Assembly: GCF_006345805.1 (NCBI RefSeq)
Contig: NC_043014.1
Coordinates: 10,974,001 to 11,038,000 of the forward strand
DNA: 64,000 bases
Direction of reading: 5' to 3'
Origin: Octopus sinensis
Lineage: Eukaryota
Under the pieces are notes generated by a model that was given only the letters and a program-made list of their open reading frames with translations, ran no database searches and was not told where the DNA came from. A program made the translations under genes and the position numbers. Shown piece after piece: positions 1 through 63,600 of the stretch (positions within the stretch are counted from its first letter, which is position 1; every line of letters begins with the position of its first letter).

Positions 1-3000
1 GTAAAAGCCTTGCCAAAACTGACCTCGCCTGTGCTTGTACCACATTAAAAGCCCTAAGTCCACTTGGCTGAGCAGTTGGTGTTAGGAAGGGAATCCAGCT
101 GTAAAAGACTTGCCAAAACTGACCTCGCCTGTGCTTGTACCACATTAAAAGCCCTAAGTCCACTCAGCTGAGCAGTTGGTGTTAGGAAGGGCATCCAGCT
201 GTAAAAGCCTTGCCAAAACTGACCTCGCCTTTGCTTGTAACATTAAAACAGTAAGTCCACTTGGTTGAGCAGTTGGTGTTTGGAAGGGCATCCAGCTGTA
301 AAAGCCTTGCCAAAACTGACCTGCCTGTGCTTGTACCACATTAAAAGCAGTAAGTCCACTTGGTGAGCAGTTGGTGTTAGGAAGGGCATCCAGCTGTAAA
401 AGCCTTGCCAAAACTGACCTCGCCTGTGCTTGTACCACATTAAAAGCAGTAAGTCCACTTGGTTGAGCAGTTGGTGTTAGGAAGGGCATCCAGCTGTAAA
501 AGCCTTGCCAAAACTGACCTCGCCTGTGCTTGTACCACATTAAAAGCAGTAAGTCCACTTGGGAGCAGTTGGTGTTAGGAAGGGCATCCAGCTGTAAAAG
601 CCTTGCCAAAACTGACCTCGCCTGTGCTTGTACCACATTAAAAGCCCTAAGTCCACTCAGCTGAGCAGTTGGTGTTAGGAAGAGCATCCAGCTGTAAAAG
701 CCTTGCCAAAACTGACCTCGCCTGTGCTTGTACCACATTAAAAGCAGTAAGTCCACTCAGCTGAGCAGTTGGTGTTAGGAAGGGCATCCAGCTGTAAAAG
801 CCTTGCCAAAACTGACCTCGCCTGTGCTTGTACCACATTAAAAGCCCTAAGTCCACTTGGCTGAGCAGTTGGTGTTAGGAAGGGAATCCAGCTGTAAAAG
901 ACTTGCCAAAACTGACCTCGCCTGTGCTTGTACCACATTAAAAGCCCTAAGTCCACTCAGCTGAGCAGTTGGTGTTAGGAAGGGCATCCAGCTGTAAAAG
1001 CCTTGCCAAAACTGACCTCGCCTGTGCTTGTATTACATTAAAAGCAGTAAGTCCACTTGGTTGAGCAGTTGGTGTTAGGAAGGGCATCCAGCTGTAAAAG
1101 CCTTGCCAAAACTGACCTCGCCTGTGCTTGTACCACATTAAAAGCCCTAAGTCCACTCAGCTGAGCAGTTGGTGTTAGGAAGGGCATCCAGCTGTAAAAG
1201 CCTTGCCAAAACTGACCTCGCCTGTGCTTGTACCACATTAAAAGCCCTAAGTCCACTCAGCTGAGCAGTTGGTGTTAGGAAGAGCATCCAGCTGTAAAAG
1301 CCTTGCCAAAACTGACCTCGCCTGTGCTTGTACCACATTAAAAGCAGTAAGTCCACTCAGCTGAGCAGTTGGTGTTAGGAAGGGCATCCAGCTGTAAAAG
1401 CCTTGCCAAAACTGACATCGCCTGTGCTTGTACCACATTAAAAGCCTAAGTCCACTTGGCTGAGCAGTTGGTGTTAGGAAGGGAATCCAGCTGTAAAAGA
1501 CTTGCCAAAACTGACCTCGCCTGTGCTTGTACCACATTAAAAGCCCTAAGTCGACTCAGCTGAGCAGTTGGTGTTAGGAAGGGCATCCAGCTGTAAAAGC
1601 CTTGCCAAAACTGACCTCGCCTGTGCTTGTACCACATTAAAAGCAGTAAGTCCACTTGGTTGAGCAGTTGGTGTTAGGAAGGGCATCCAGCTGTAAAAGC
1701 CTTGCCAAAACTGACCTAGCCTGTGCTTGTACCACATTAAAAGCCCTAAATCCCCTTAGCAGAGCAGTTGGTGTTAGGAAGGGCATCCAGCTGTAAAAGC
1801 CTTGCCAAAACTGACCTCGCCTGTGCTTGTACCACATTAAAAGCAGTGAGTCCACTCAGCTGGGCAGTTGGTGTTAGGAAGGGCATCCAGCTGTAAAAGC
1901 CTTGCCAAAACTGACCTCGCCTTGCTTGTACCACATTAAAAGCAGTAAGTCCACTCAGCTGAGCAGTTGGTGTTAGGAAGGGCATCGAGTTGTAAAAGCC
2001 TTGACAAAACTGACCTCGCTGTGCTTGTACCACATTAAGCAGCAGTAAGTCCACTCAGCTGAGCAGTTGGTGTTAGGAAGGGCATCCAGCTGTAAAAGCC
2101 TTGCCAAAACTGACCTCGCCTGTGCTGTACCACATTAAAAGCAGTAAGTCCACTCAGCTGAGCAGTTGGTGTTAGGAAGGGCATCCGGCTGTAAAAGCCT
2201 TGCCAAAACTGACCTCGCCTGTGCTTGTACCACATTAAAAGCAGTAAGTCCACTCAGCTGAGCAGTTGGTGTTAGGAAGGGCATCCAGCTGTAAAAGCCT
2301 TGCCAAAACTGACCTCGCTGTGCTTGTACCACATTAAAAGCAGTAAGTCCACTCAGCTGAGCAGTTGGTGTTAGGAAGGGCATCCAGCTGTAAAAGCCTT
2401 GCCAAAACTGACCTCGCCTGTGCTTGTACCACATTAAAAGCAGTAGTAAGTCCACTCAGCTGAGCAGTTGGTGTTAGGAAGAGCATCCAGCTGTAAAAGC
2501 CTTGCCAAAACTGACCTCGCCTGTGCTTGTACCACATTAAAACAGTAAGTCCACTCAGCTGAGCAGCTGGTTGGTGTTAGGAAGGGCATCCAGCTGTAAA
2601 AGCCTTGCCGAAAACTGACCTCGCCTGTGCTTGTACCACATTAAAAGCAGTAAGTCCACTCAGCTGAGCAGTTGGTGTTAGGAAGAGCATCCAGCTGTAA
2701 AAGCCTTGCCAAAACTGACCTCGCCTGTGTTGTACCACATTAAAAGCAGTAAGTCCACTCAGCTGAGCAGTTGGTGTTAGGAAGGGCATCAGCTGCTGTA
2801 AAAGCGTTGCCAAAACTGACCTCGCCTGTGCTTGTACCACATTAAAAGCCTAAGTCCACTTGGCTGAGCAGTTGGTGTTAGGAAGGGAATCCAGCTGTAA
2901 AAGACTTGCCAAAACTGACTTCGCCTGTGCTTGTACCACATTAAAACCCCTAAGTCCACTCAGCTGAGCAGTTGGTGTTAGGAAGGCATCCAGCTGTAAA

Positions 3001-6000
3001 AGCCTTGCCAAAACTGACCTCGCCTGTGCTTGTACCACATTAAGCAGCAGTAAGTCCACTGGCTGAGCAGTTGGTGTTAGGAAGGGCATCCAGCTGTAAA
3101 AGCCTTGCCAAAACTGACCTCGCCTGTGCTTGTACCACATTAAAAGCAGTAAGTCCACTTGGCTGAGCAGTGGTGTTAGGAAGGGCATCCAGCTGTAAAA
3201 GCCTTGCAAAACTGACCTCGCCTGTGTGTTGTACCACATTAAAAGCCCTAAGTCCACTCAGCTGAGCAGTTGGTGTTAGGAAGAGCATCCAGCTGTAAAA
3301 GCCTTGCCAAAACTGACCTCGCCTGTGCTTGTACCACATTAAAAGCAGTAAGTCCACTCAGGAGCAGTTGGTGTTAGGAAGGGCATCCAGCTGTAAAAGC
3401 CTTGCCAAAACTGACCTCGCCTGTGCTTGTAACCACATTAAAAGCCCTAAGTCCACTTGGCTGAGCAGTTGGTGTTAGGAAGGGAATCCAGCTGTAAAAG
3501 ACTTGCCAAAACTGACCTCGCCTGTGCTTGTACCACATTAAAAGCCCTAAGTCCACTCAGCTGAGCAGTTGGTGTTAGGGGAAGGCATCCAGCTGTAAAA
3601 GCCTTGCCAAAACTGACCTCGCCTGTGCTTGTATTACATTAAAAGCAGTAAGTCCACTTGGTTGAGCAGTTGGTGTTAGGAAGGGCATCCAGCTGTAAAA
3701 GCCTTGCCAAAACTGACCTCGCCTGTGCTTGTACCACATTAAAAGCAGTAAGTCCACTTGGTTGAGCAGTTGGTGTTAGGAAGGGCATCCAGCTGTAAAA
3801 GCCTTGCCAAAACTGACCTCGCCTGTGCTTGTACTACATTAAAAGCAGTAAGTCCACTTGGTTGAGCAGTTGGTGTTAGGAAGGGCATCCAGCTGTAAAA
3901 GCCTTGCCAAAACTGACCTCGCCTGTGCTTGTACCACATTAAAAGCAGTAAGTCCACTTGGCTGAGCAGTTGGTGTTAGGAAGGGCATCCAGCTGTAAAA
4001 GCCTTGCCAAAACTGACCTCGCCTGTGCTTGTACCACATTAAAAGCAGTAAGTCCACTTGGTTGAGCAGTTGGTGTTAGGAAGGGCATCCAGCTGTAAAA
4101 GCCTTGCCAAAACTGACCTCGCCTGTGCTTGTACCACATTAAAAGCCCTAAGTCCACTCAGCTGAGCAGTTGGGGTTAGGAAGAGCATCCAGCTGTAAAA
4201 GCCTTGCAAAACTGACCTCGCCTGTGCTTGTACCACATTAAAAGCAGTAAGTCCACTCAGCTGAGCAGTTGGTGTTAGGAAGGGCATCCAGCTGTAAAAG
4301 CCTTGCCAAAACTGACCTCGCCTGTGGCTTGTACCACATTAAATGCCCTAAGTCCACTTGGCTGAGCAGTTGTTGTGTTAGGAGGGCATCCAGCTGTAAA
4401 AGCCTTGCCAAAACTGACCTCGCCTGTGCTTGTACCACATTAAAAGCCCTAAGTCGACTCAGCTGAGCAGTTGGTGTTAGGAAGGGCATCCAGCTGTAAA
4501 AGCCTTGCCAAAACTGACCTCGCCTGTGCTTGTACCACATTAAAAGCAGTAAGTCCACTGGTTGAGCAGTTGGTGTTAGGAAGGGCATCCAGCTGTAAAA
4601 GCCTTGCCAAAACTGACCTCGCCTGTGCTTGTACCACATTAAAAGCAGTGAGTCCACTCAGCTGGGCAGTTGGTGTTAGGAAGGCATCCAGCTGTAAAAG
4701 CCTTGCCAAAACTGACCTCGCCTGTGCTTGTACACATTAAAAGCAGTAAGTCCACTCAGTGAGCAGTTGGTGTTAGGAAGGGCATCGAGTTGTAAAAGCC
4801 TTGACAAAACTGACCTCGCCTGTGCTTGTACCACATTAAAAGCAGTAAGTCCACTCAGCTGAGCAGTTGGTTAGGAAGGGCATCCAGCTGTAAAAGCCTT
4901 GCCAAAACTGACCTCGCCTGTGCTGTACCACATTAAAAGCAGTAAGTCCACTCAGCTGAGCAGTTGGTGTTAGGAAGGGCATCCGGCTGTAAAAGCCTTG
5001 CCAAAACTGACCTCGCCTGTGCTTGTACCACATAAAAGCAGTAAGTCCACTCAGCTGAGCAGTTGGTGTTAGGAAGGGCATCCAGCTGTAAAAGCCTTGC
5101 CAAAACTGACCTCGCCTGTGCTTGTACCACATTAAAAGCAGTAAGTCCACTCAGCTGAGCAGTTGGTGTTAGGAAGGGCATCCAGCTGTACAAGCCTTGC
5201 CAAAACTGACCTCGCTTGTGCTTGTACCACATTAAAAGCAGTAAGTCCACTCAGCTGAGCAGTTGGTGTTAGGAAGAGCATCCAGCTGTAAAAGCCTTGC
5301 CAAAACTGACCCGCCGCCTGTGCTTGTACCACATTAAAAGCAGTAAGTCCACTCAGCTGAGCAGCTGGTGTTAGGATGGGCATCCAGCTGTAAAAGCCTT
5401 GCCAAAACTGACCTCGCCTGTGCTTGTACCACATTAAAAGCAGCAAGTCCACTCAGCTGAGCAGTTGGTGTTAGGAAGGGCATCCAGCTGTAAAAGCGTT
5501 GCCAAAACTGACCTCGCCTGTGCTTGTACCACATTAAAAGCCCTAAGTCCACTTGGCTGAGCAGTTGGTGTTAGGAAGGGAATCCAGCTGTAAAAGACTT
5601 GCCAAAACTGACCTCGCCTGTGCTTGTACTACATTAAAAGCAGTAAGTCCACTTGGTTGAGCAGTTGGTGTTAGGAAGGGCATCCAGCTGTAAAAGCCTT
5701 GCCAAAACTGACCTCGCCTGTGCTTGTATTACATTAAAAGCAGTAAGTCCACTTGGTTGAGCAGTTGGTGTTAGGAAGGGCATCCAGCTGTAAAAGCCTT
5801 GCCAAAACTGACTCGCCTGTGCTTGTACCACATTAAAAGCAGTAAGTCCACTTGGTTGAGCAGTTGGTGTTAGGAAGGGCATCCAGCTGTAAAAGCCTTG
5901 CCAAAACTGACCTCGCCTGTGCTTGTATACAATTAAAAGCAGTAAGTCCACTGGTTGAGCAGTTGGTGTTAGGAAGGGCATCCAGCTGTAAAAGCCTTGC

Positions 6001-9000
6001 CAAAACTGACCTCGCCTGTGCTTGTACCACATTAAAAGCAGTAAGTCCACTTGCTGAGCAGTTGGTGTTAGGAAGGGCATCCAGCTGTAAAAGCTTGCCA
6101 AAACTGACCTCGCCTGTGCTTGTACCACATTAAAAGCAGTAAGTCCACTTGGTTGAGCAGTTGTGTGTTAGGAAGGGCATCCAGCTGTAAAAGCCTTGCC
6201 AAAACTGACCTCGCCTGTGCTTGTACCACATTAAAAGCCCTAAGTCCACTCAGCTGAGCAGTTGGTGTTAGGAAGAGCATCCAGCTGTAAAAGCCTTGCC
6301 AAATGACCATCGCCTGTGCTTGTACCACATTAAAAGCAGTAAGTCACTCTCGCTGAGCAGTTGGTGTTAGGAAGGGCATCCAGCTGTAAAAAGCCTTTGC
6401 CCAAAACTGACCCTCGCAGTCTGTGCTTGGTACCACATTAAACTGCCCTAAGTCCACTTGGTCTGTCAGCAGGTTGGTGTTAGGAAGGGCATCCAGCTGT
6501 AAAAGCCTTGCCAAAACTGACCTCGCCTGTGCTTGTACCACATTAAAAGCCCTAGTAGACCCTCAGCTGAGCAGCTTGGTGTTAGGAAGGGCTACACCCA
6601 GCTGTAAAAGCCTTGCCAAAACTGACCTCGCCTGTGCTTGTACCACATTAAAAGCAGTAAGTCCACTTGGTTGAGCAGTTGGTGTTAGGAAGGGCATCCA
6701 GCTGTAAAAGCCTTGCCAAAACTGACCTCGCCTGTGCTTGTACCACATTAAAAGCAGTGAGTCCACTCAGCTGGGCAGTTGGTGTTAGGAAGGGCATCCA
6801 GCTGTAAAAGCCTTGCCAAAACTGACCTCGCCTGTGCTTGTACCACATTAAAAGCAGTAAGTCCACTCAGCTGAGCAGTTGGTGTTAGGAAGGGCATCGA
6901 GTTGTAAAAGCCTTAACAAAACTGACCTCGCCTGTGCTTGTACCACATTAAAAGCAGTAAGTCCACTCAGCTGAGCAGTTGGTGTTAGGAAGGGCATCCA
7001 GCTGTAAAAGCCTTGCCAAAACTGACCTCGCCTGTGCATGTACCACATTAAAAGCAGTAAGTAGTCCACTCAGCTGAGCAGTTGGTGTTAGGAAGGGCAT
7101 CCAGCTGTAAAAGCCTTGCCAAAACTGACCTCGCCTGTGCTTGTACCACATTAAAAGCAGTAAGTCCACTCAGCTGAGCAGTTGGTGTTAGGAAGGGCAT
7201 CCAGCTGTAAAAGCCTTGCCAAAACTGACCTCGCCTGTGCTTGTACCACATTAAAAGCAGTAAGTCCACTCAGCTGAGCAGTTGGTGTTAGGAAGGGCAT
7301 CCAGCTGTAAAAGCCTTGCCAAAACTGACCTCGCTTGTGCTTGTACCACATTAAAAGCAGTAAGTCCACTCAGCTGAGCAGTTGGTGTTAGGAAGAGCAT
7401 CCAGCTGTAAAGCCTTGCCAAAACTGACCTCGCCTGTGCTTGTACCACATTAAAAGCACAGTAAGTCCAACTCAAGCTGAGAAGCTGGTGTTAGGATGGG
7501 CATCCAGCGTAACTAAGCTGCCAAAATTGCACCATCCCTGTCGCCTCCTGTACTTTTAACCTCCTAAAAGCAAAGCAAGTCCACTCAGCTGAGCAGTTGG
7601 TGTTAGGAGGGCATCGAGTTGTAAAAGCCTGCAAAAATACTGCCACTCGCCTGTGCTTGTACCACATTAAAAGCAGTAATGTCCACTCAGCTGAGCAGTT
7701 GGTGTTAGGAGGGCATCCAGCTGTAAAAGCCTTGCCAAAACTGACCGTCGCCTGTGCTTGTACCACATTAAAAGCAGTAAGTCCACTTGGTGAGCAGTTG
7801 GTGTTAGGAAGGGCATCCAGCTGTAAAAGCCTTGCCAAAACTGACCTCGCCTGTGCTTGTACCACATTAAAAGCCCTAAGTCCACTCAGCTGAGCAGTTG
7901 GTGTTAGAAGAGCATCCAGCTGTAAAAGCCTTGCCAAAACTGACTCGCCTGTGCTTGTACCACATTAAAAGCAGTAAGTCCACTCAGCTGAGCAGTTGGT
8001 GTTAGGAAGGGCATCCAGCTGTAAAAGCCTTGCCAAAACTGACCTCGCTGTGCTTGTACCACATTAAATGCCCTAAGTCCACTTGGCTGAGCAGTTGGTG
8101 TTAGGAAGGGCATCCAGCTGTAAAAGCCTTGCCAAAACTGACCTCGCCTGTGCTTGTACCACATTAAAAGCCCTAAGTCGACTCAGCTGAGCAGTTGGTG
8201 TAGGAAGGGCATCCAGCTGTAAAAGCCTTGCAAAACTGACCTCGCCTGTGCTTGTACCACATTAAAAGCAGTAAGTCCACTTGGTTGAGCAGTTGGTGTT
8301 AGGAAGGGCATCCAGCTGTAAAAGCCTTGCCAAAACTGACCTCGCCTGTGCTTGTACCACATTAAAAGCAGTGAGTCCACTCAGCTGGGCAGTTGGTGTT
8401 AGGAAGGGCATCCAGCTGTAAAAGCCTTGCCAAACTGACCTCGCCTGTGCTTGTACCACATTAAAAGCAGTAAGTCCACTCAGCTGAGCAGTTGGTGTTA
8501 GGAAGGGCATCGAGTTGTAAAAGCCTTGACAAAACTGACCTCGCCTGTGCTGTGTTACCACATTAAAAGCCCAGTAAGTCCACTCAGCTGAGCAGTTGGT
8601 GTTAGGAAGGGCATCCAGCTGTAAAAGCCTTGCCAAAAAACCTGACCTCGCCTGTGCATGTACCACATTAAAGCAGTAAGTCCACTCAGCTGAGCAGTTG
8701 GTGTTAGGAAGGGCATCGGCTGTAAAAGCCTTGCCAAAACTGACCTCGCCTGTGCTTGTACCACATTAAAAGCAGTAAGTCCACTCAGCTGAGCAGTTGG
8801 TGTTAGGAAGGGCATCCAGCTGTAAAAGCCTGCCAAAACTGACCTCGCCTGTGCTTGTACCACATTAAAAGCAGTAAGTCCACTCAGCTGAGCAGTTGGT
8901 GTTAGGAAGGGCATCCAGCTGTACAGCCTTGCCAAAACTGACCTCGCTTGTGCTTGTACCACATTAAAAGCAGTAAGTCCACTCAGCTGAGCAGTTGGTG

Positions 9001-12000
9001 TTAGGAAGAGCATCCAGCTGTAAAAGCCTTGCAAAACTGACCTCGCCTGTGCTTGTACCACATTAAAAGCAGTAAGTCCACTCAGCTGAGCAGCTGGTGT
9101 TAGGATGGGCATCCAGCTGTAAAAGCCTTGCCAAAACTGACCTCGCCTGTGCTTGTACCACATTAAAAGCAGCAAGTCCACTCAGCTGAGCAGTTGGTGT
9201 TAGGAAGGGCATCCAGCTGTAAAAGCGTTGCCAAAACTGACCTCGCCTGTGCTTGTACCACATTAAAAGCCCTAAGTCCACTTGGCTGAGCAGTTGGTGT
9301 TAGGAAGGGAATCCAGCTGTAAAAGACTTGCCAAAACTGACCTTGCCTGTGCTTGTACTACATTAAAAGCAGTAAGTCCACTTGGTTGAGCAGTTGGTGT
9401 TAGGAAGGGCATCCAGCTGTAAAAGCCTTGCCAAAACTGACCTCGCCTGTGCTTGTATTACATTAAAAGCAGTAAGTCCACTTGGTTGAGCAGTTGGTGT
9501 TAGGAAGGGCATCCAGCTGTAAAAGCCTTGCCAAAAACTGACCTCGCCTGTGCTTGTACCACATTAAAAGCAGTAAGTCCACTTGGTTGAGCAGTTGGTG
9601 TTAGGAAGGGCATCCAGCTGTAAAAGCCTTGCCAAAACTGACCTCGCTGTGCTTGTACTACATTAAAAGCAGTAAGTCCACTTGGTTGAGCAGTTGGTGT
9701 TAGGAAGGGCATCCAGCTGTAAAAGCCTTGCCAAAACTGACCTCGCCTGTGCTTGTACCACATTAAAAGCAGTAGTAAGTCCACTTGGCTGAGCAGTTGG
9801 TGTTAGGAAGGGCATCCAGCTGTAAAAGCCTTGCCAAAACTGACCTCGCCTGTGCTTGTACCACATTAAAAGCAGTAAGTCCACTTGGCTGAGCAGTTGG
9901 TGTTAGGAAGGGCATCCAGCTGTAAAAGCCTTGCCAAAACTGACCTCGCCTGTGCTTGTACCACATTAAAAGCCCTAAGTCCACTCAGCTGAGCAGTTGG
10001 TGTTAGGAAGAGCATCCAGCTGTAAAAGCCTTGCCAAAACTGACCTCGCCTGTGCTTGTACCACATTAAAAGCAGTAAGTCCACTCAGCTGAGCAGTTGG
10101 TGTTAGGAAGGGCATCCAGCTGTAAAAGCCTTGCCAAAACTGACCTCGCCTGTGCTTGTACCACATTAAATGCCCTAAGTCCACTTGGCTGAGCAGTTGG
10201 TGTTAGGAAGGGCATCCAGCTGTAAAAGCCTTGCCAAAACTGACCTCGCCTGTGCTTGTACCACATTAAAAGCCCTAAGTCGACTCAGCTGAGCAGTTGG
10301 TGTTAGGAAGGGCATCCAGCTGTAAAAGCCTTGCCAAAACTGACCTCGCCTGTGCTTGTACCACATTAAAAGCAGTAAGTCCACTTGGTTGAGCAGTTGG
10401 TGTTAGGAAGGGCATCCAGCTGTAAAAGCCTTGCCAAAACTGACCTCGCCTGTGCTTGTACCACATTAAAAGCAGTGAGTCCACTCAGCTGGGCAGTTGG
10501 TGTTAGGAAGGGCATCCAGCTGTAAAAGCCTTGCCAAAACTGACCTCGCCTGTGCTTGTACCACATTAAAAGCAGTAAGTCCACTCAGCTGAGCAGTTGG
10601 TGTTAGGAAGGGCATCGAGTTGTAAAAGCCTTGACAAAACTGACCTCGCCTGTGCTTGTACCACATTAAAAGCAGTAAGTCCACTCAGCTGAGCAGTTGG
10701 TGTTAGGAAGGGCATCCAGCTGTAAAAGCCTTGCCAAAACTGACCTCGCCTGTGCATGTACCACATTAAAAGCAGTAAGTCCACTCAGCTGAGCAGTTGG
10801 TGTTAGGAAGGGCATCCGGCTGTAAAAGCCTTGCCAAAACTGACCTCGCCTGTGCTTGTACCACATTAAAAGCAGTAAGTCCACTCAGCTGAGCAGTTGG
10901 TGTTAGGAAGGGCATCCAGCTGTAAAAGCCTTGCCAAAACTGACCTCGCCTGTGCTTGTACCACATTAAAAGCAGTAAGTCCACTCAGCTGAGCAGTTGG
11001 TGTTAGGAAGGGCATCCAGCTGTACAAGCCTTGCCAAAACTGACCTCGCTTGTGCTTGTACCACATTAAAAGCAGTAAGTCCACTCAGCTGAGCAGTTGG
11101 TGTTAGGAAGAGCATCCAGCTGTAAAAGCCTTGCCAAAACTGACCTCGCCTGTGCTTGTACCACATTAAAAGCAGTAAGTCCACTCAGCTGAGCAGCTGG
11201 TGTTAGGATGGGCATCCAGCTGTAAAAGCCTTGCCAAAACTGACCTCGCCTGTGCTTGTACCACATTAAAAGCAGCAAGTCCACTCAGCTGAGCAGTTGG
11301 TGTTAGGAAGGGCATCCAGCTGTAAAAGCGTTGCCAAAACTGACCTCGCCTGTGCTGTACCACATTAAAAGCCCTAAGTCCACTTGCTGAGCAGTTGGTG
11401 TTAGGAAGGGAATCCAGCTGTAAAAGACTTGCCAAAACTGACCTCGCCTGTGCTTGTACTACATTAAAAGCAGTAAGTCCACTTGGTTGAGCAGTTGCAG
11501 TTGGTGTTAGGAAGGGCATCCAGCTGTAAAAGCCTTGCCAAAACTGACCTCGCCTGTGCTTGTACCACATTAAAAGCAGTAAGTCCACTTGGCTGAGCAG
11601 TTGGTGTTAGGAAGGGCATCCAGCTGTAAAAGCCTTGCCAAAACTGACCTCGCCTGTGCTTGTACCACATTAAAAGCAGTAAGTCCACTTGGTTGAGCAG
11701 TTGGTGTTAGGAAGGGCATCCAGCTGTAAAAGCCTTGCCAAAACTGACCTCGCCTGTGCTTGTACCACATTAAAAGCAGTAAGTCCACTTGGCTGAGCAG
11801 TTGGTGTTAGGAAGGGCATCCAGCTGTAAAAGCCTTGCCAAAACTGACCTCGCCTGTGCTTGTACCACATTAAAGCCCTAAGTCCACTCAGCTGAGCAGT
11901 GTTGGTGTTAGGAAGAGCATCCAGCTGTAAAAGCCTTGCCAAAATTGACCTCGCCTGTGCTTGTACCACATTAAAAGCAGTAAGTCCACTCAGCTGAGCA

Positions 12001-12740
12001 GTTGGTGTTAGGAAGGGCATCCAGCTGTAAAAGCCTTGCCAAAACTGACCTCGCCTGTGCTTGTACCACATTAAAAGCCCTAAGTCCACTTGGCTGAGCA
12101 GTTGGTGTTAGGAAGGGCATCCAGCTGTAAAAGCCTTGCCAAAACTGACCTCGCCTGTGCTTGTACCACATTAAAAGCAGTAAGTCCACTTGGTGGAGGT
12201 TGAGTTGTGTTGTGTAGGAAGGGCATCCAGCTGAAAAGCCTTGCCAAAACTGACCTTGCCTGTTTTGCTTGTACCACATTAAAAGCCCTAAGTCCACTTG
12301 GCAGAGCAGTTGGTGTTAGGAAGGGCATCCAGCTGTAAAAGCCTTGCCAAAACTGACCTCGCCTGTGCTTGTACCACATTAAAAGCAGTAAGTCCACTCA
12401 GCTGAGCAGTTGGTGTTAGGAAGGGCATCCAGCTGTAAAAGCCTTGCCAAAACCGACCTTGCCTGTGCTTGTACCACATTAAAAGCAGTAAGTCCACTCA
12501 GCTGAGCAGTTGGTGTTAGGAAGGGCATCCAGCTGTAAAAGCCTTGCCAAAACTGACCTCGCCTGTGCATGTACCACATTAAAAGCCCTAAGTCCACTTG
12601 GCAGAGCAGTTGGTGTTAGGAAGGGCATCCAGCTGTAAAAGCCTTGCCAAAACTGACCTCGCCTGTGCTTGTACCACATTAAAAGCCCTAAGTCCACTTG
12701 GCAGAGCAGTTGGTGTTAGGAAGGGCATCCAGCTGTAAAA
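1..12740. repeat. Tandem array of a 100-bp unit, about 127 monomers, left end beyond the window
   Basis: Unit ctgtgcttgtaccacattaaaagcagtaagtccactcagctgagcagttggtgttaggaagggcatccagctgtaaaagccttgccaaaactgacctcgc repeated head to tail; exact 100-bp spacing at 9866-11366. Confidence 0.99.
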
Positions 12741-12841
12741 ATTCCTGCCGAAACAGTTGCAGAAGTCTGGTGCAGGTTTCTGCCTAGCCAAACCATCCCT
12801 CCCATGTCAGCATGGAAGGCAAATGTTAAACGATGATGATT
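12741..12841 (+). mobile_element. 3' end of a SINE (family B) continuing directly from the last satellite monomer
   Basis: tctggtgcagg...ccatccctcccatgtcagcatggaaggcaaatgttaaacgatgatgat matches the 3' end and (GAT)n tail of dispersed family-B copies. Confidence 0.85.
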
Positions 12842-13036
12842 AATCCCTGCTGTTCAGAAGTGAGTATGATTATGGCTGGAATACTTGACCAAAAGGGCTC
12901 CTGACCAAGAGCTGCTTCTATGCAAGGCTTCAATACTTCTCCACAATGGTAATACAAATATTTAAGTTAATTTACCACAGTCATTACTGATTTAATGACT
13001 CCCACAATAAAGCAGTACTGTTACTTACTGAAGTCA

Positions 13037-13073
<37 letters not shown>

Positions 13074-13162
13074 ATAACGGTTAAAATTAATTAATTAATA
13101 ATTAATAATTTTACCAAGTAGTTCGATATGTTAAAAGAACCATTATTGGTAAACTTATACAA

Positions 13163-13351
13163 AAATTCTATAATTGTGAGTATAATTATAATTAGAGTTC
13201 AGCAAAAATTTGCTTCACCACAAAACTTGCTGTCTGGGAGATTTTCTTATGGCAATGAAATAGTTAGTTTTAACTGCTATTTCTAAATTTCGGTATGTGG
13301 TGAAGCAAATTTTTTCTGAACCCTAATTATAATTATACTCGAAATTATAGA

Positions 13352-13355
<4 letters not shown>
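13163..13355. repeat. Inverted repeat with about 60-bp arms between (TA)n tracts (foldback/MITE-like)
   Basis: aaattctataattgtgagtataattataattagagttcagcaaaaatttgcttcaccaca (13163-13222) versus its near reverse complement at 13296-13355. Confidence 0.8.
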
Positions 13356-13390
<35 letters not shown>

Positions 13391-13491
13391 TTCTATTTCT
13401 TATGTTTCACAAAAACATAATTTGGCCCACAAATCAAACAAGCTTTTCTTTATGAAAGAAATCAATGTTGTTACACATTGCTTTATACATA

Positions 13492-13766
13492 ACTAGCAGT
13501 ATCGCCCGGCGTTGCTCGGGTTTGTAAGGGAAATAACTCTATAAGCAGTTTTAGAGAGTTACTTCCCTTATATAATAGCAAAAATGCACTAAAAATGGAA
13601 ATAAATGATGGTAAATTATTTTTAAAATCGTAGACTCATCGTAGACGCACGCTAATACCCAGAAGGGCTTGTGGGTAAACTGCACGGCAAAATGGGGGAG
13701 TAGTTGGGAATCTAAATCGTAGGAGACAGACACCACACAACTTCAGTTTTATATATATATATAGAT
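13492..13766 (+). mobile_element. Non-autonomous Helitron-like element
   Basis: Starts actagcagtatcgcccggcgttgctcgg and ends cacaacttcagttttatatatatatatagat; the same termini occur inverted at 34821-35216; class inferred from resemblance to non-autonomous Helitron termini. Confidence 0.6.
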
Positions 13767-13812
13767 ATTTGTCGACATTTTCTTCACTTATCCCATCTGC
13801 AGATGTTAAATC

Positions 13813-13848
<36 letters not shown>

Positions 13849-14048
13849 GTGGCAAACTGACAAAATCATTAGCACTCTGGGTGAAAAGCTTAGTGACATT
13901 TCATCCGTCTCTATGTTCTGAGTTCAAATTTCGCCAGAGTCAATAACATAAGTACCAACTGAATATAGGGGTCAATGTAATTGATTAGTCTCTTCCCCTA
14001 AAATTTCAAGCCTCATGCCTTTAGTAGAAAGGATTATTATTATTATTA

Positions 14049-60050
<46,002 letters not shown>

Positions 60051-60334
60051 CTGAAAGGAGAAAAAAACAGAAAGAACTATCAAATAATGCACTGGAAAAA
60101 CAGAGACAATAAATGACACAGTTTTTTATGTCTGACATAGGTTGTGGGACTTCACCCTACATTATTCTTTGCTATGTTCAATGAACATTTTAACCACATA
60201 CAAACACACATTATTTTTTTTTTAGTCTAACATATGTAGAAGGACTTGCCATAAACTTTTCCCATCTGACACGAGATCAATTCCCCCAATGGCCCCTCCA
60301 CTCTCAAAGGATCTTTGTCTTGCAACTTACTTGG

Positions 60335-60624
60335 TGACCCACCTAGTGCTGGTGCCACATAAAAAGCACCTAGTCCACAGTCTAAAGTGGTTGGCACTTG
60401 GAAGGGCATCCAACTGTAAAACCATGCCAAAAAAACTGACCCCCACCTGTGTTGGTGCCATGTAAAAAGCACTCAGTCCACTCTGCTCAGCAGGTGGTTG
60501 GTGTTTGGAAAGGCATCCAGCTGTAAAAACCTGAAGCCTGGTGCAGTCTTGTGCTTGGCCGGCTCTTGTCAAGCCACACAACCCATGCCAGCATGGAAGA
60601 CAAATGTTAAACGCTGATGATGAG
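60335..60624 (+). mobile_element. Family-B SINE with an internal duplication of the core (two units)
   Basis: Core ggaagggcatccaactgtaaa and ggaaaggcatccagctgtaaaa about 104 bp apart, followed by a normal 3' end and tail. Confidence 0.85.
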
Positions 60625-63600
60625 GATTTCTATTGAACTGTATCATCATTCAACATGCATGGTCTATCCTGCCATGAACTGGCCAACCAGAGAACTGCAC
60701 CAGGCTCTGTCCAATTATTTGCTTTTACATGGTTTGTACGGCTGACACCCTTTCAAGAGCCAACCATTTTACAGACTGCACTGAGTGCTTTTTTACACGG
60801 CATCACCACCAGTGCCATTATGGTGGCACTGGCACCCACTTCCGCTAATTTTGAAAATGATAAAGAATTTACTGAATTATTTTGGTCATTACTAAGCTGC
60901 CAATTGGAAAATAAATTAATATGGAATTTTAATGGGAAAGTTTTAGATCACTTTATAAAGAAATTTTATTTCTTTATTGTTCACAGGGTGCTAAACATAG
61001 AGGGAATGAACACGGAGAGACAAAGGGATTAAGTCAATTATATCAACCCCAGTGCATAACTGGTCCTTAATTTATCGACTCCATAAGGATGAAAGGCAAA
61101 GTCGACCTCGGCGGAATTTGAACTCAGAACGTAAAGGCAGACAAAATAATGCTAAGTATTTTACCCAGCGTGCTAAAGTTTCTGCCAGCTCAAAGAAGCA
61201 GGGAGAAGTCTTGGTATCAAAGGGGTTTATATGCAGATCACCCTATATCAATCTCCAGAATATTCAAACGTACTTTTTAGCAACACACACACACACACAC
61301 ACTACCTGGGTATGCTAAAGTTAGGCATACTGTATTTTTCCAATCCAATAAAAAGTAAACACAAAGATCACCCAAACAATGAATTAATACTAATACTAGT
61401 AGCTAATGCTTATTTGGGGAGAACGTACTAAATCTGATAACATAAAGCAAATCATCTCAAAAATAAAATCCCCCTGGGTCTTACCATGCGAAGGTGAGCT
61501 TATAATCCATGCTTTACAGCAATAAACCCAATTTTCCCTGAATATGCACTGCTGAAACAGAGTGCATCTCTTATGCCATCAAATACAGCAGTCTGTGTCT
61601 CATCGAGCCAATGAAGGAGGATTCTGCATAGTTACTCAACCTTCTAAACAAAGCAGACAAATCTCACTCAAATATTACCCTACTGTCCTTTCTAGAACAC
61701 TAAACAGATGATATCACCAGTCAGCATATTAGCCACAAGTCAATTTGAAAATTACAATGACCGTAAATAGTAACAAACAGAAGAAACACACTGGTGGTAT
61801 ATTCTAAAAACTATAAGGCGGCGAGCTGGCAGAAACGTTAGCATGTCGGGCGAAATGCTTAGCGGTATTTCGTCTGCCGTTACGTTGAGTTCAAATTCCG
61901 CCGAGGTCGACTTTACCTTTCATCCTTTCGGGGTCAATAAATTAAGTACCAGTTACGCACTGGGGTCGATGTAATCGACTTAATACCTATGTCTGTCCTT
62001 GTTTGTCCCTTGCGGGTAATAAAGAAATGGGTATATTCTAAAGACTACCGCATTGCGCATCTCACCCTTAATCACTACATAGCAGGTCAATGTGAAGCGA
62101 ATGGGTATTTGTGTATATGACAGGTGCATGGCTCAGTGGTTAGAGCGCTGGGCTCACAATAATGAAGTAGTGAGTTTGGTTCCTGGGCCAGGTTGTGCTG
62201 TGTTCTTGAGCAATACACTTTATTTCACGTTGCTCCAGTTCACTCATCTGTAGAAATGCGTTGCAGTGTAATTGTTACCAAGCTGTATCGGCCCCTTTGC
62301 CTTTCCCTTGGATAACATCAGTGGCATGGAAAAGGGAGGCTGGTATGCATGGGCGACTGCTGGTCTCCCATAAACAACCTTGCACAGACTTGTACCTTGG
62401 AGAGTAACTTTCTACCTGCAGCCTTATGGTGATTCATGACCAAAAGGGGTCTTTACCTTTTATATGCAACAGATGCAGGCTTGGCTATCAGGGAGCACAG
62501 CTGAAGCTGTCAGATAAGGCGGTGAGCTAGCAGAAATGTTAAAGCAACGGGTGAAATGCTTAGTGGTAGTTCATCTACCATTACGTTTTGAGTTCAAATC
62601 TTACGGCAAAAACAAACGTAAAGCTGTTTACCAGACAAATACAGAGATCAATTTATTCGACTAACCACATCTTTCTAAATAACGGCTTTCGTTAAAAACG
62701 AATATTATCACCCGAGCTGCTAAGGAAGGCGACGAACTGGCAGAGTCATTAGTCCGCCTTCACGTTCTGATCTCAAATTCCGCTGAGATCGACTTTGTCT
62801 TTCATCCTTTCGGGGTCGATAAATTAAGTACCAGTTATGCACTGAGGGTTGATGTAATTGACTTAATCCCTTTGTCTGTCCTTATTTGATCTCTCTGTGT
62901 TTAGGCCCTTGTAGGTAGTAAAGAAACAGGTATTTCCTCTGCCGCTACGTTCTGAGTTCAAATTCCGCTGAGATCGACTTTGCCTTTCATCCTTTCGGGG
63001 TCAATAAATTAAGTACCAGTTACGCACTGGGGTCGATATAATCGACTTAATCCGTTTGTCTGTCCTTGTTTGTCCCTTCAATGTTTAGCCCCTTCTGGGC
63101 AGTAAAGAAATAAGAAGCTTGCCTCCTCGGGTCCAGTCCAACAACATGGCACTTTAACCATCCGCATACTGACCAAAGCCTTACAAGTGGATTGGGTACA
63201 TGGAAACTGAAAGAAGCCAGTCATGTTATGTGTGTGCGTGTGTATTACTGTCTTCTTGCCGTGACAACATGCGATGATTGTAAACTAATGTAATCATGCA
63301 AGCAATGTCCTTTCTTTCCAATCACCTGTGAAAACATGTCCGATCACAGGGAAATATCACCTCACTAGGTACAGGAGTGGCTGTGTGTTAATTAGCTTGC
63401 TTACCAACTACACGGTTCCGGGTTCAGTACCACTGCGTGGCACCTTGAGCAAGTGTTTTCTACTATAGCCTCAGGCCGACCAAAGCCTTGTGAGGGATTT
63501 GGTAGGCGGAAACTGAAAGAAGCCCTCGTATATATATATGTATATATATAAATATGTGTGTGTGTTTGTCCCCCTAACATCGCTTGACAACCGATGCTGG

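What the first reader, a model, noticed from the sequence alone, without database searches (positions are those of the whole stretch)
1..12841. At least 12.7 kb of SINE-derived macrosatellite apparently inside an intron of the essential gene SPT16
Seen in sequence: about 127 head-to-tail 100-bp monomers. The monomer is the central part of the dispersed family-B SINE: a 25-bp subrepeat (cctgtgcttgtaccacattaaaagc) plus the core gttggtgttaggaagggcatccagctgtaaaa..gccaaaactgac. The last monomer runs directly into an ordinary SINE 3' end with a (GAT)n tail at 12741-12841. Inference: the array arose by in-place amplification of the interior of one SINE copy. Because the SPT16 ORF is still open at 14121, the array would be transcribed as pre-mRNA of a housekeeping chromatin gene.
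Basis: partly seen in the sequence, partly recalled or inferred. Interest (0 to 1): 0.82.

Follow-up and report, generated by a model that had tools for sequence, protein, structure and literature searches.

The report
SINE-derived satellite array in octopus SPT16 intron
A real block of at least 127 tandem 100-bp repeats, built from part of a common short mobile element, has inflated one intron of an octopus housekeeping gene (SPT16) more than ten-fold compared with a related octopus; it is a good example of a known way that satellite DNA is born, not a new kind of element.

Summary
Positions 1-12740 are 127 head-to-tail 100-bp monomers, 93% matching, cut off by the window start. The monomer is homologous to a dispersed SINE-like retroposon. 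The last monomer runs into that element's normal 3' end, which has a (GAT)3 tail.

SPT16 lies on the minus strand, so the array is antisense to it. Its last visible exon (...FLDPESE, 14250-14121) ends at a GTAAGC donor. The remaining ~159 codons are not in the window.

The whole gene is collinear with Octopus bimaculoides at about 86% identity. That species and Argonauta have an intron at the same codon, 1.2 and 1.8 kb long; here it exceeds 14.1 kb. O. bimaculoides keeps only the last ~51 nt of this SINE plus tail, has no monomers, and has the next exon 565 bp further on.

The monomer-to-monomer junction already exists in a two-unit dispersed copy shared by both species, so the array grew from a pre-existing internal duplication. 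The architecture matches the SINE-derived satellites described in squamate reptiles.

Unverified: the far flank, genome-wide distribution, and in-place growth versus templated import. I rate it a new member of a known kind, of moderate-low interest.

The parts
1..12740 (+). Tandem array of 127 monomers of ~100 bp, written in SINE-sense orientation and antisense to SPT16. It is truncated by the window start.
   Evidence: TRF. nhmmer finds 127 hits. Monomer statistics and block duplications.
12741..12841 (+). Longer terminal unit: the SINE-like element's 3' region continuing from the last monomer to its terminus, with (GAT)3 at 12832-12840. It lacks ~10 nt present in the 12 other SINE copies aligned, between 12789 and 12790.
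   Evidence: Alignments A1 and A3. nhmmer core+3' probe aligns to 12709-12842, E=7e-16.
12791..12841 (+). The part of the SINE 3' end that is orthologous to the remnant in the O. bimaculoides intron (L002 70385-70437). Homology to O. bimaculoides stops exactly at 12791.
   Evidence: blastn. Pairwise alignment A2.
12842..14120 (-). Proximal part of the SPT16 intron, orthologous to O. bimaculoides intron L002 69805-70384. It carries a lineage-specific insertion at 12975-13363.
   Evidence: Collinear blastn chain.
14115..14120 (-). 5' splice site GTAAGC of the intron that holds the array. O. bimaculoides has the same donor sequence.
14121..14250 (-). SPT16 exon encoding (N)[43 protein letters not shown]. 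It is the last SPT16 exon in the window.
   Evidence: Translation. tblastn is 100% identical to the Argonauta and O. bimaculoides proteins.
14121..60065 (-). SPT16 (FACT large subunit) gene body: 22 exon matches covering residues 19-924 of the 1083-aa Argonauta hians ortholog, with no in-frame stops. The C-terminal ~159 residues are absent from the window.
   Evidence: tblastn. Tail searches were negative.
60322..60632 (+). Dispersed copy of the same SINE-like family with two monomer-like units in tandem (60322-60522), then the normal 3' end. It is orthologous to O. bimaculoides L002 40577-40767 and shows the array's unit junction.
   Evidence: nhmmer (60335-60414 and 60419-60522). Alignment A1. 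Collinear chain.
19132..19337 (-). Dispersed copy with one nearly full monomer-like unit (monomer positions 5-99, E=3e-13) plus the 3' end. It is orthologous to L002 65550-65770.
30532..31498 (+). Second expansion from the same family in another SPT16 intron: the 25-bp subrepeat x32.8 (30532-31343) running into core+3' end (31364-31498). The stretch is ~1.19 kb here against ~150 bp in O. bimaculoides.
   Evidence: TRF.. Unit homology z=6.9, 0 of 500 shuffles. Chain gap.

Best explanation
This is a SINE-derived satellite array sitting, antisense, in the intron of an octopod SPT16 gene that separates the exon ending ...FLDPESE from the exon beginning DEHEDDD....

Proposed history:
- A short retroposon of the dispersed 'family B' type was already in this intron in the common ancestor with O. 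bimaculoides. This family has a 25-bp subrepeat, a ~45-bp conserved core, a 3' region and a (GAT)n tail.
- Members of the family can carry two ~100-bp body units in tandem.
- After the split from the O. bimaculoides lineage, out-of-register recombination or repair between such units multiplied the unit to at least 127 copies. Candidate processes are unequal sister-chromatid or homolog exchange, replication slippage, and SDSA re-invasion. This step is inferred.
- Later multi-monomer block duplications followed.

The array has no function of its own. It is tolerated because it is removed with the intron, which has grown from roughly 1-2 kb to more than 14 kb.

Shown: array structure, SINE homology, terminal unit, conserved intron position, orthologous flank, absence of the array in O. 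bimaculoides, pre-existing junction.
Inferred: the amplification mechanism, its timing, its neutrality, and that the next exon lies beyond the array.
For: Array and monomers.

Homology to dispersed copies: 18 nhmmer hits in the window and 12 in the O. bimaculoides locus. There are 26 core+3' copies in both orientations.

Terminal unit is colinear with the SINE 3' end.

The junction gtaaaa(g)cc(t)tgccaaaa..ctgacc..cctgtg is present in a two-unit copy shared with O. bimaculoides.

SPT16 exons lie on the minus strand, 90-100% identical to the octopod proteins, and the last exon ends at GAA|GTAAGC.

The same intron exists in O. bimaculoides (1197 bp, GT..AG) and in Argonauta (~1.78 kb). Sepia has none at that position.

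Window 14120->12791 aligns to the O. bimaculoides intron at 84-92%. O. bimaculoides has no monomer there, and its next exon lies 565 bp past the remnant.

Block duplications: monomers 45-56 vs 103-114 at 98.9%, and 78-85 vs 99-106 at 99%.

There is no TE insertion inside 12.7 kb, although the other 51 kb carry 47 SINE pieces. That density predicts ~11.7 insertions, so the array is younger than most SINE activity (inference).

Monomer pairwise divergence (7.7%) is lower than the between-species divergence of aligned sequence (14%).

The same architecture is published for squamate sSats (PMC10702118).
Against: The 5' side of the array and the downstream exons are outside the window. Intronic location therefore rests on orthology of one flank.

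The O. bimaculoides ortholog has only a 51-nt remnant plus tail, so an ancestral full-length copy is assumed, not seen.

The remnant's 5' edge coincides within 1-2 nt with a ~10-nt gap in the window's terminal unit. That fits joining of two pieces at least as well as two independent deletions.

No second assembly, no reads and no RNA data were available.

The family's Pol III head was not found, so 'SINE' is a working label.
Confidence: 0.7

Rival explanations
1. Templated import. The ancestral intron held only the 5'-truncated 51-nt SINE remnant plus tail, as in O. bimaculoides. A break at its 5' edge was repaired by strand invasion into another SINE or array copy elsewhere (SDSA, BIR or ectopic gene conversion). 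That copied, and possibly expanded by re-invasion, array sequence into the intron.
For: Homology to O. bimaculoides stops at 12791. A ~10-nt discontinuity relative to the 12 other SINE copies aligned lies at 12789/12790. One event would explain both observations.
Against: Both halves of the terminal unit share the same subfamily signatures (AAACCATCC, GGAAGGCA, closest to the copy at 49999-50145), as expected for one original copy. No other array locus was seen in ~190 kb of octopod sequence examined. The other junction is unseen.
Confidence: 0.15
2. Assembly problem. The array is real sequence, but its length or placement is wrong. It could be a contig that ends in a satellite, a collapsed or expanded array, or a misjoin through the shared SINE 3' end. 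If so, the intron may not contain 12.7+ kb.
For: The array runs to the window edge. Long homogeneous arrays are classic sites of misassembly. The bridge between array and orthologous sequence is only ~50 nt of SINE (12741-12790).
Against: The monomers are diverged, with a non-periodic variant pattern and long-range block structure, which is unlike a collapse artefact. The transition from monomer to terminal unit to orthologous flank is seamless. The 3' exons are absent from the 14 kb where they would lie if the intron were short.
Confidence: 0.1
3. Functional element. The array is kept because it does something for SPT16 or for chromatin. Possibilities are splice-timing or decoy exons, a dsRNA/A-to-I editing substrate formed with inverted SINE copies in neighbouring introns, a small-RNA source, or a boundary element.
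For: The strand present in the pre-mRNA carries GAG|GTCAGT in 110 monomers, CTGCTCAG in 87 and CCTAAC in 123. Opposite-orientation copies of the family lie within 6 kb, at 18460-18537 and 19243-19337.
Against: The array is absent from the orthologous intron of O. bimaculoides and Argonauta. Monomers drift freely. No Rfam family matches. Argonauta SPT16 introns hold many unrelated arrays, so such arrays look like neutral clutter.
Confidence: 0.05

Closest known systems
SINE-derived satellites (sSats) of squamate reptiles (Vassetzky, Kosushkin & Ryskov 2023, Mob DNA 14:21, PMC10702118)
   Same: Both are tandem arrays whose unit is a portion of a SINE body, with a longer terminal unit that continues to the SINE terminus. 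Both show tens to hundreds of units, incomplete homogenisation, independent origin in different lineages, and related copies with only internal duplications.
   Different: This host is a cephalopod mollusc and the retroposon family is unrelated. The locus is inside a conserved housekeeping gene rather than subtelomeric. The number of loci in the genome is unknown here. The authors stated they did not know whether sSats exist outside squamates.
Satellites and minisatellites born from internal tandem repeats of transposable elements (own knowledge: Drosophila DINE-TR1 and Tetris, bivalve pearl/CvA MITE-satellite families, plant LTR 3'-UTR repeats)
   Same: An element that already carries a short internal tandem duplication seeds a long array by unequal exchange. 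Dispersed copies hold 1-2 units and some loci hold very many.
   Different: Those elements are DNA transposons, Helitrons or LTR elements. Here it is a SINE-like retroposon with a (GAT)n tail.
Octopus SINEs OR1/OR2/OK (Ohshima & Okada 1994; OR1 is a CORE-SINE, cited in PMC4824008)
   Same: The window is full of tRNA/CORE-like heads: 21 'family A' copies. It also holds a second abundant short retroposon family from which the array derives.
   Different: I could not match family B to a named family. No tRNA-like head was found on it. No sequence-level match appeared in the paper library.

Membership tests
SINE-derived satellite (sSat sensu Vassetzky et al. 2023) | Head-to-tail tandem array of many units | tested here: met
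   127 units, period 100, 93% matches.
SINE-derived satellite (sSat sensu Vassetzky et al. 2023) | Unit homologous to part of a dispersed SINE | tested here: met
   nhmmer hits to 18 dispersed copies in the window and 12 in O. bimaculoides, best E=3e-13 over monomer positions 5-99. Alignments A1 and A3.
SINE-derived satellite (sSat sensu Vassetzky et al. 2023) | Longer terminal unit continuing to the SINE terminus | tested here: met
   12741-12841 is colinear with the 3' region and (GAT)n tail of typical copies.
SINE-derived satellite (sSat sensu Vassetzky et al. 2023) | Several loci per genome with homogenisation between loci; subtelomeric preference | not testable with these tools
   No genome of the source species is available. 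A protein-level search with an array ORF and two metagenome DNA scans found nothing.
SINE (for the parent 'family B' element) | Short, highly repeated, dispersed in both orientations, with a simple-repeat 3' tail | tested here: met
   26 core+3' copies in 51 kb on both strands, most ending in (GAT)n.
SINE (for the parent 'family B' element) | Pol III-type head derived from tRNA, 7SL or 5S RNA | tested here: inconclusive
   ARAGORN and Rfam find nothing. Copies begin inside 25/62-66-bp subrepeats. Only 2 of 21 tRNA/CORE-like 'family A' heads abut a family-B core, which looks like adjacent insertions.
SINE (for the parent 'family B' element) | Target-site duplications and a 3' region shared with a partner LINE | not tested
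   No empty sites or LINE consensus were available.
SPT16 / FACT large subunit (host gene) | Collinear match to full-length SPT16 with its domain set (PF14826, PF00557, PF08644, PF24824, PF08512, PF21091) | tested here: met
   22 exon matches to Argonauta hians SPT16 residues 19-924, mostly 83-100% identical (the exon at 60065-59631 scored 38% over a stretched HSP), with no in-frame stops. Domains are as precomputed for the orthologs. The PF21091-bearing C-terminal tail is outside the window.
Macrosatellite | Very large repeat unit (commonly kb-scale, e.g. D4Z4) in arrays of tens to hundreds of kb | tested here: not met
   The unit is 100 bp, and the visible array is 12.7 kb. The definition is from own knowledge. 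Under looser definitions (unit of 100 bp or more) it is borderline.

The most novel reading that the evidence does not exclude
The array was not grown from a resident full-length SINE. It was seeded by break repair primed from a 51-nt SINE remnant that invaded another SINE or array copy. Under this reading, old SINE fragments act as landing pads that let satellite arrays jump into genes by templated repair. The antisense monomers then place up to about 100 splice-like decoys in an essential gene's pre-mRNA.
Probability: 0.12. Interest if true: 0.55.

Novelty: new member of a known kind. Interest (0 to 1): 0.3.

Why it matters
This locus documents the SINE-to-satellite route outside squamate reptiles, in a cephalopod. 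It offers an unusually clean before/after comparison:
- the same intron is 1.2 kb without the array in O. bimaculoides and more than 14 kb with it here;
- the two-unit intermediate is preserved as an orthologous dispersed copy;
- a second, smaller expansion of another segment of the same element lies in another intron of the same gene.

That makes it a convenient natural system for studying how tandem arrays start from retroposons, and how a highly expressed essential gene tolerates a large, homogeneous, splice-site-like intronic array. It does not reveal a new class of element or mechanism.

Tried and rejected
Species and second assembly:
- The first protein search, with a chimeric 279-aa query, returned only fragments. 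The second, with 824 aa, found Argonauta and O. bimaculoides but no identical protein.
- An exact-ORF look-up of a window ORF found nothing on record.

Genome-wide distribution of the monomer:
- A protein search with the 72-aa consensus array ORF gave no hit.
- Two exact-pattern scans of metagenome contigs, one of the unit junction and one of the core-junction, gave 0 hits.
- These are weak negatives, because the collections are not expected to hold octopus satellites.

RNA and literature:
- Rfam at gathering thresholds and ARAGORN found nothing in the window.
- A literature search for the core sequence gave 0 papers. Searches for octopus/cephalopod SINE-derived satellites found nothing specific.

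Rejected ideas:
- A strict higher-order repeat. Identity by lag shows only modest peaks at 21 and 37 monomers, plus scattered block duplications. A megablast self-comparison listed no long off-diagonal segments.
- The 62-66-bp subrepeats of typical copies being shortened 100-bp units. Beyond the shared 25 bp the alignment is not significant (z=2.1).
- The missing C-terminal exons hiding in 12842-14120 or elsewhere in the window. There is no match to the Sepia or octopod tails, or to O. bimaculoides exon DNA.
- Families A and B being one composite SINE. Only 2 of 21 heads abut a B core.
Full report
OBSERVATION

Tandem Repeats Finder reports a single array at 1..12740 with period 100, 127.1 copies, 93% matches and 2% indels. 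A profile search with the consensus monomer recovers 127 monomers in the array. Monomer lengths are 97-114 bp, so nothing larger than 14 bp interrupts the array.

Median identity to the consensus is 97% and mean pairwise identity is 92.3%. The array begins at base 1 of the window and shows no decay toward that edge, so it is cut off and 12.7 kb is a minimum.

PvuII sites (CAGCTG) occur 191 times. 125 of 127 monomers have at least one, and the largest fragment is 184 bp.

There is no strict higher-order repeat. Identity by lag has small peaks at 21 and 37 monomers. There are multi-monomer block duplications: monomers 45-56 match 103-114 at 98.9%, and 78-85 match 99-106 at 99%. This is the footprint of repeated unequal exchange.

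RELATION TO THE DISPERSED ELEMENT

The consensus monomer also hits 18 places outside the array in the window and 12 in the O. bimaculoides locus, on both strands. A probe made of a typical core plus 3' end finds 26 dispersed copies, plus the end of the array (12709-12842, probe positions 3-145 of 156, E=7e-16).

Alignments show that the last monomer continues colinearly into the element's 3' region and a (GAT)3 tail at 12832-12840. The 25-bp segment of the monomer is the same subrepeat that forms a separate 25-bp x 33 array at 30532-31343 (z=6.9, 0 of 500 shuffles).

The element is short, abundant and tailed with (GAT)n. However, I found no tRNA-like head on it: ARAGORN and Rfam return nothing, and copies start inside subrepeats. 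A distinct tRNA/CORE-like family, with 21 heads, only occasionally abuts it. 'SINE' is therefore a reasonable but unproven label.

THE JUNCTION PRE-EXISTS

A dispersed copy at 60322-60632 carries two monomer-like units in tandem, with the same unit-to-unit junction as the array (gtaaaaccatgccaaaaaaactgacccccacctgtg), followed by the normal 3' end. The last two array monomers align to it column by column.

This copy is orthologous to O. bimaculoides L002 40577-40767. The flanks match and it lies inside the collinear chain. The two-unit structure is therefore older than the species split. The array did not need a new junction, only further out-of-register exchange.

The array consensus is 77% identical to unit 2 of that copy and 73% identical to the single-unit copy at 19243-19345. 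The progenitor was a related member of the family, not an identical one.

THE HOST GENE

SPT16 is on the minus strand. Twenty-two exon matches, from 60065 down to 14121, cover residues 19-924 of the 1083-aa Argonauta hians SPT16. Identity is mostly 83-100%, and there are no stops.

The last exon in the window (14250-14121) encodes ...[11 protein letters not shown]. It ends in phase 0 and is followed by GTAAGC at 14120-14115.

The acidic C-terminal tail is about 159 residues and includes the conserved SSEESGKDWDELEEEA motif. It has no match anywhere in the window, whether the query is the Sepia tail, the octopod tail or O. bimaculoides exon DNA.

The array is antisense to the gene.

COMPARATIVE TEST OF THE INTRON CLAIM

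The window is collinear with O. bimaculoides CM046620.1:38.40-38.48 Mb (L002) across the whole gene. 19.4 kb align at a mean of 86%. The source is therefore another octopodid.

- O. bimaculoides has an intron at exactly the same codon. The sequence reads ...gagagtgaa|gtaagctttt ... tctgtttgcag|gatgagcat, and the intron is 1197 bp.
- Argonauta has one of ~1.78 kb.
- In Sepia pharaonis the exon is continuous.

In the window this intron is longer than 14.1 kb, several times longer than any other SPT16 intron visible here.

The O. bimaculoides intron aligns to window 14120->12791 at 84-92%. Homology stops exactly at 12791, inside the SINE 3' end. O. bimaculoides keeps only the last ~51 nt plus tail (L002 70385-70437) and has no monomer there. 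Its next exon lies 565 bp further on.

The right-hand junction of the array is thus anchored in bona fide orthologous SPT16 intron. The array, or at least its expansion, is specific to the window's lineage.

AGE (INFERENCE)

Three observations point to an expansion after the split from O. bimaculoides and after the main SINE bursts:
- The 51 kb outside the array hold 47 SINE pieces. At that density ~11.7 insertions would be expected in 12.7 kb, yet there are none.
- Monomer pairwise divergence (7.7%) is below the interspecies divergence of aligned sequence (14%).
- The array is absent in O. bimaculoides.

AN UNEXPLAINED DETAIL

Relative to the 12 other aligned copies, the terminal unit lacks ~10 nt between 12789 and 12790. 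This is within 1-2 nt of the point where O. bimaculoides homology begins.

One possibility is that two independent deletions hit the same spot. The other is that the 51-nt remnant is ancestral and the array-bearing piece was joined to its edge, for example by repair synthesis primed from the remnant on another copy.

Both halves carry the same subfamily signatures, which favours a single original copy. Outgroup genomes are needed to settle this.

MECHANISM AND FUNCTION

The best-supported reading is neutral tandem amplification of a retroposon body unit in an intron, tolerated because it is spliced out.

The pre-mRNA strand of the monomer carries GAG|GTCAGT in 110 copies, CTGCTCAG in 87 and CCTAAC in 123. 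Opposite-orientation family members lie within 6 kb. Cryptic splicing or dsRNA formation is therefore conceivable, but nothing supports selection for it.

Argonauta SPT16 introns contain many unrelated arrays, so intronic arrays are common clutter in octopod genomes.

COMPARISON WITH KNOWN CASES

The architecture is that of the SINE-derived satellites described in squamates: an array of a SINE portion, plus a longer terminal unit reaching the SINE terminus, plus related copies with short internal duplications (PMC10702118). The authors of that paper did not know whether such satellites exist elsewhere.

My literature searches found no cephalopod example. This is therefore a new member of a known kind, with a particularly clear orthologous 'empty' comparison.

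LIMITS

- The far flank and the 3' exons were not seen.
- No reads, second assembly or RNA data were available.
- Genome-wide distribution of the monomer could not be tested. The searches I could run were negative but uninformative.

Noticed in passing
window 30532-31498: A second expansion from the same SINE-like family in another SPT16 intron: the 25-bp subrepeat x32.8, running into the core and 3' end. The corresponding stretch is ~1.19 kb here and only ~150 bp in O. bimaculoides (L002 58388-58536).
   Followed up: partly
window 12789-12791; L002 70437: A ~10-nt gap in the array's terminal unit, relative to the 12 other copies aligned, coincides within 1-2 nt with the 5' edge of the SINE remnant retained in O. 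bimaculoides.
   Followed up: partly
L002 10001-71199 (O. bimaculoides SPT16 model, P0143): The deposited 843-aa O. bimaculoides SPT16 model looks mis-annotated. It skips the exons matching window 49720-44083 and ends by reading into the intron after the DEHEDDD... exon (...EEESGISFSLSF...). Further 3' coding sequence lies downstream at L002 74035-74112.
   Followed up: partly
window 14121; L001 15883-16158; L002 69804; L003 44757: The intron after ...FLDPESE is present in three octopods (this window, O. bimaculoides, Argonauta hians) but absent in the cuttlefish Sepia pharaonis, where one exon runs through into the acidic tail.
   Followed up: partly
window 13038-13387: A foldback, MITE-like element (67-nt arms at 13156-13222 and 13296-13362, 91% complementary) sits between two (TA)16 runs. 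The orthologous O. bimaculoides site has just one (TA)n (L002 70252-70275), so this is a lineage-specific insertion into a microsatellite.
   Followed up: partly
window 14878-15068: A near-perfect hairpin element (78-nt arms, 95% complementary, 35-nt loop) in the intron between the last two visible SPT16 exons.
   Followed up: no
window 28363-28741: An unrelated 26-bp x 14.7 minisatellite (GGGGTTAAACACCATTTCGCAAAAAG, 92% matches) in another SPT16 intron.
   Followed up: no
L003 38377-39670, 45174-45762, 52484-52930: Argonauta hians SPT16 introns and flank are packed with unrelated tandem arrays. These include a 77-bp unit x16.8 that recurs 13 kb away, and an 84-bp x7 array (99% matches) inside the intron orthologous to the one studied here.
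   Followed up: no
window 1-12740, minus strand: The strand present in the SPT16 pre-mRNA carries splice-like motifs in most monomers: CCTAAC (123), CTGCTCAG (87) and GAG|GTCAGT (110). Together they would delimit 44-nt pseudo-exons.
   Followed up: partly
window 15421-15575 and 20 other sites: There are 21 copies of a tRNA/CORE-like SINE head ('family A', resembling the octopus OR1 CORE-SINE type). Neither ARAGORN nor Rfam reports any of them.
   Followed up: partly
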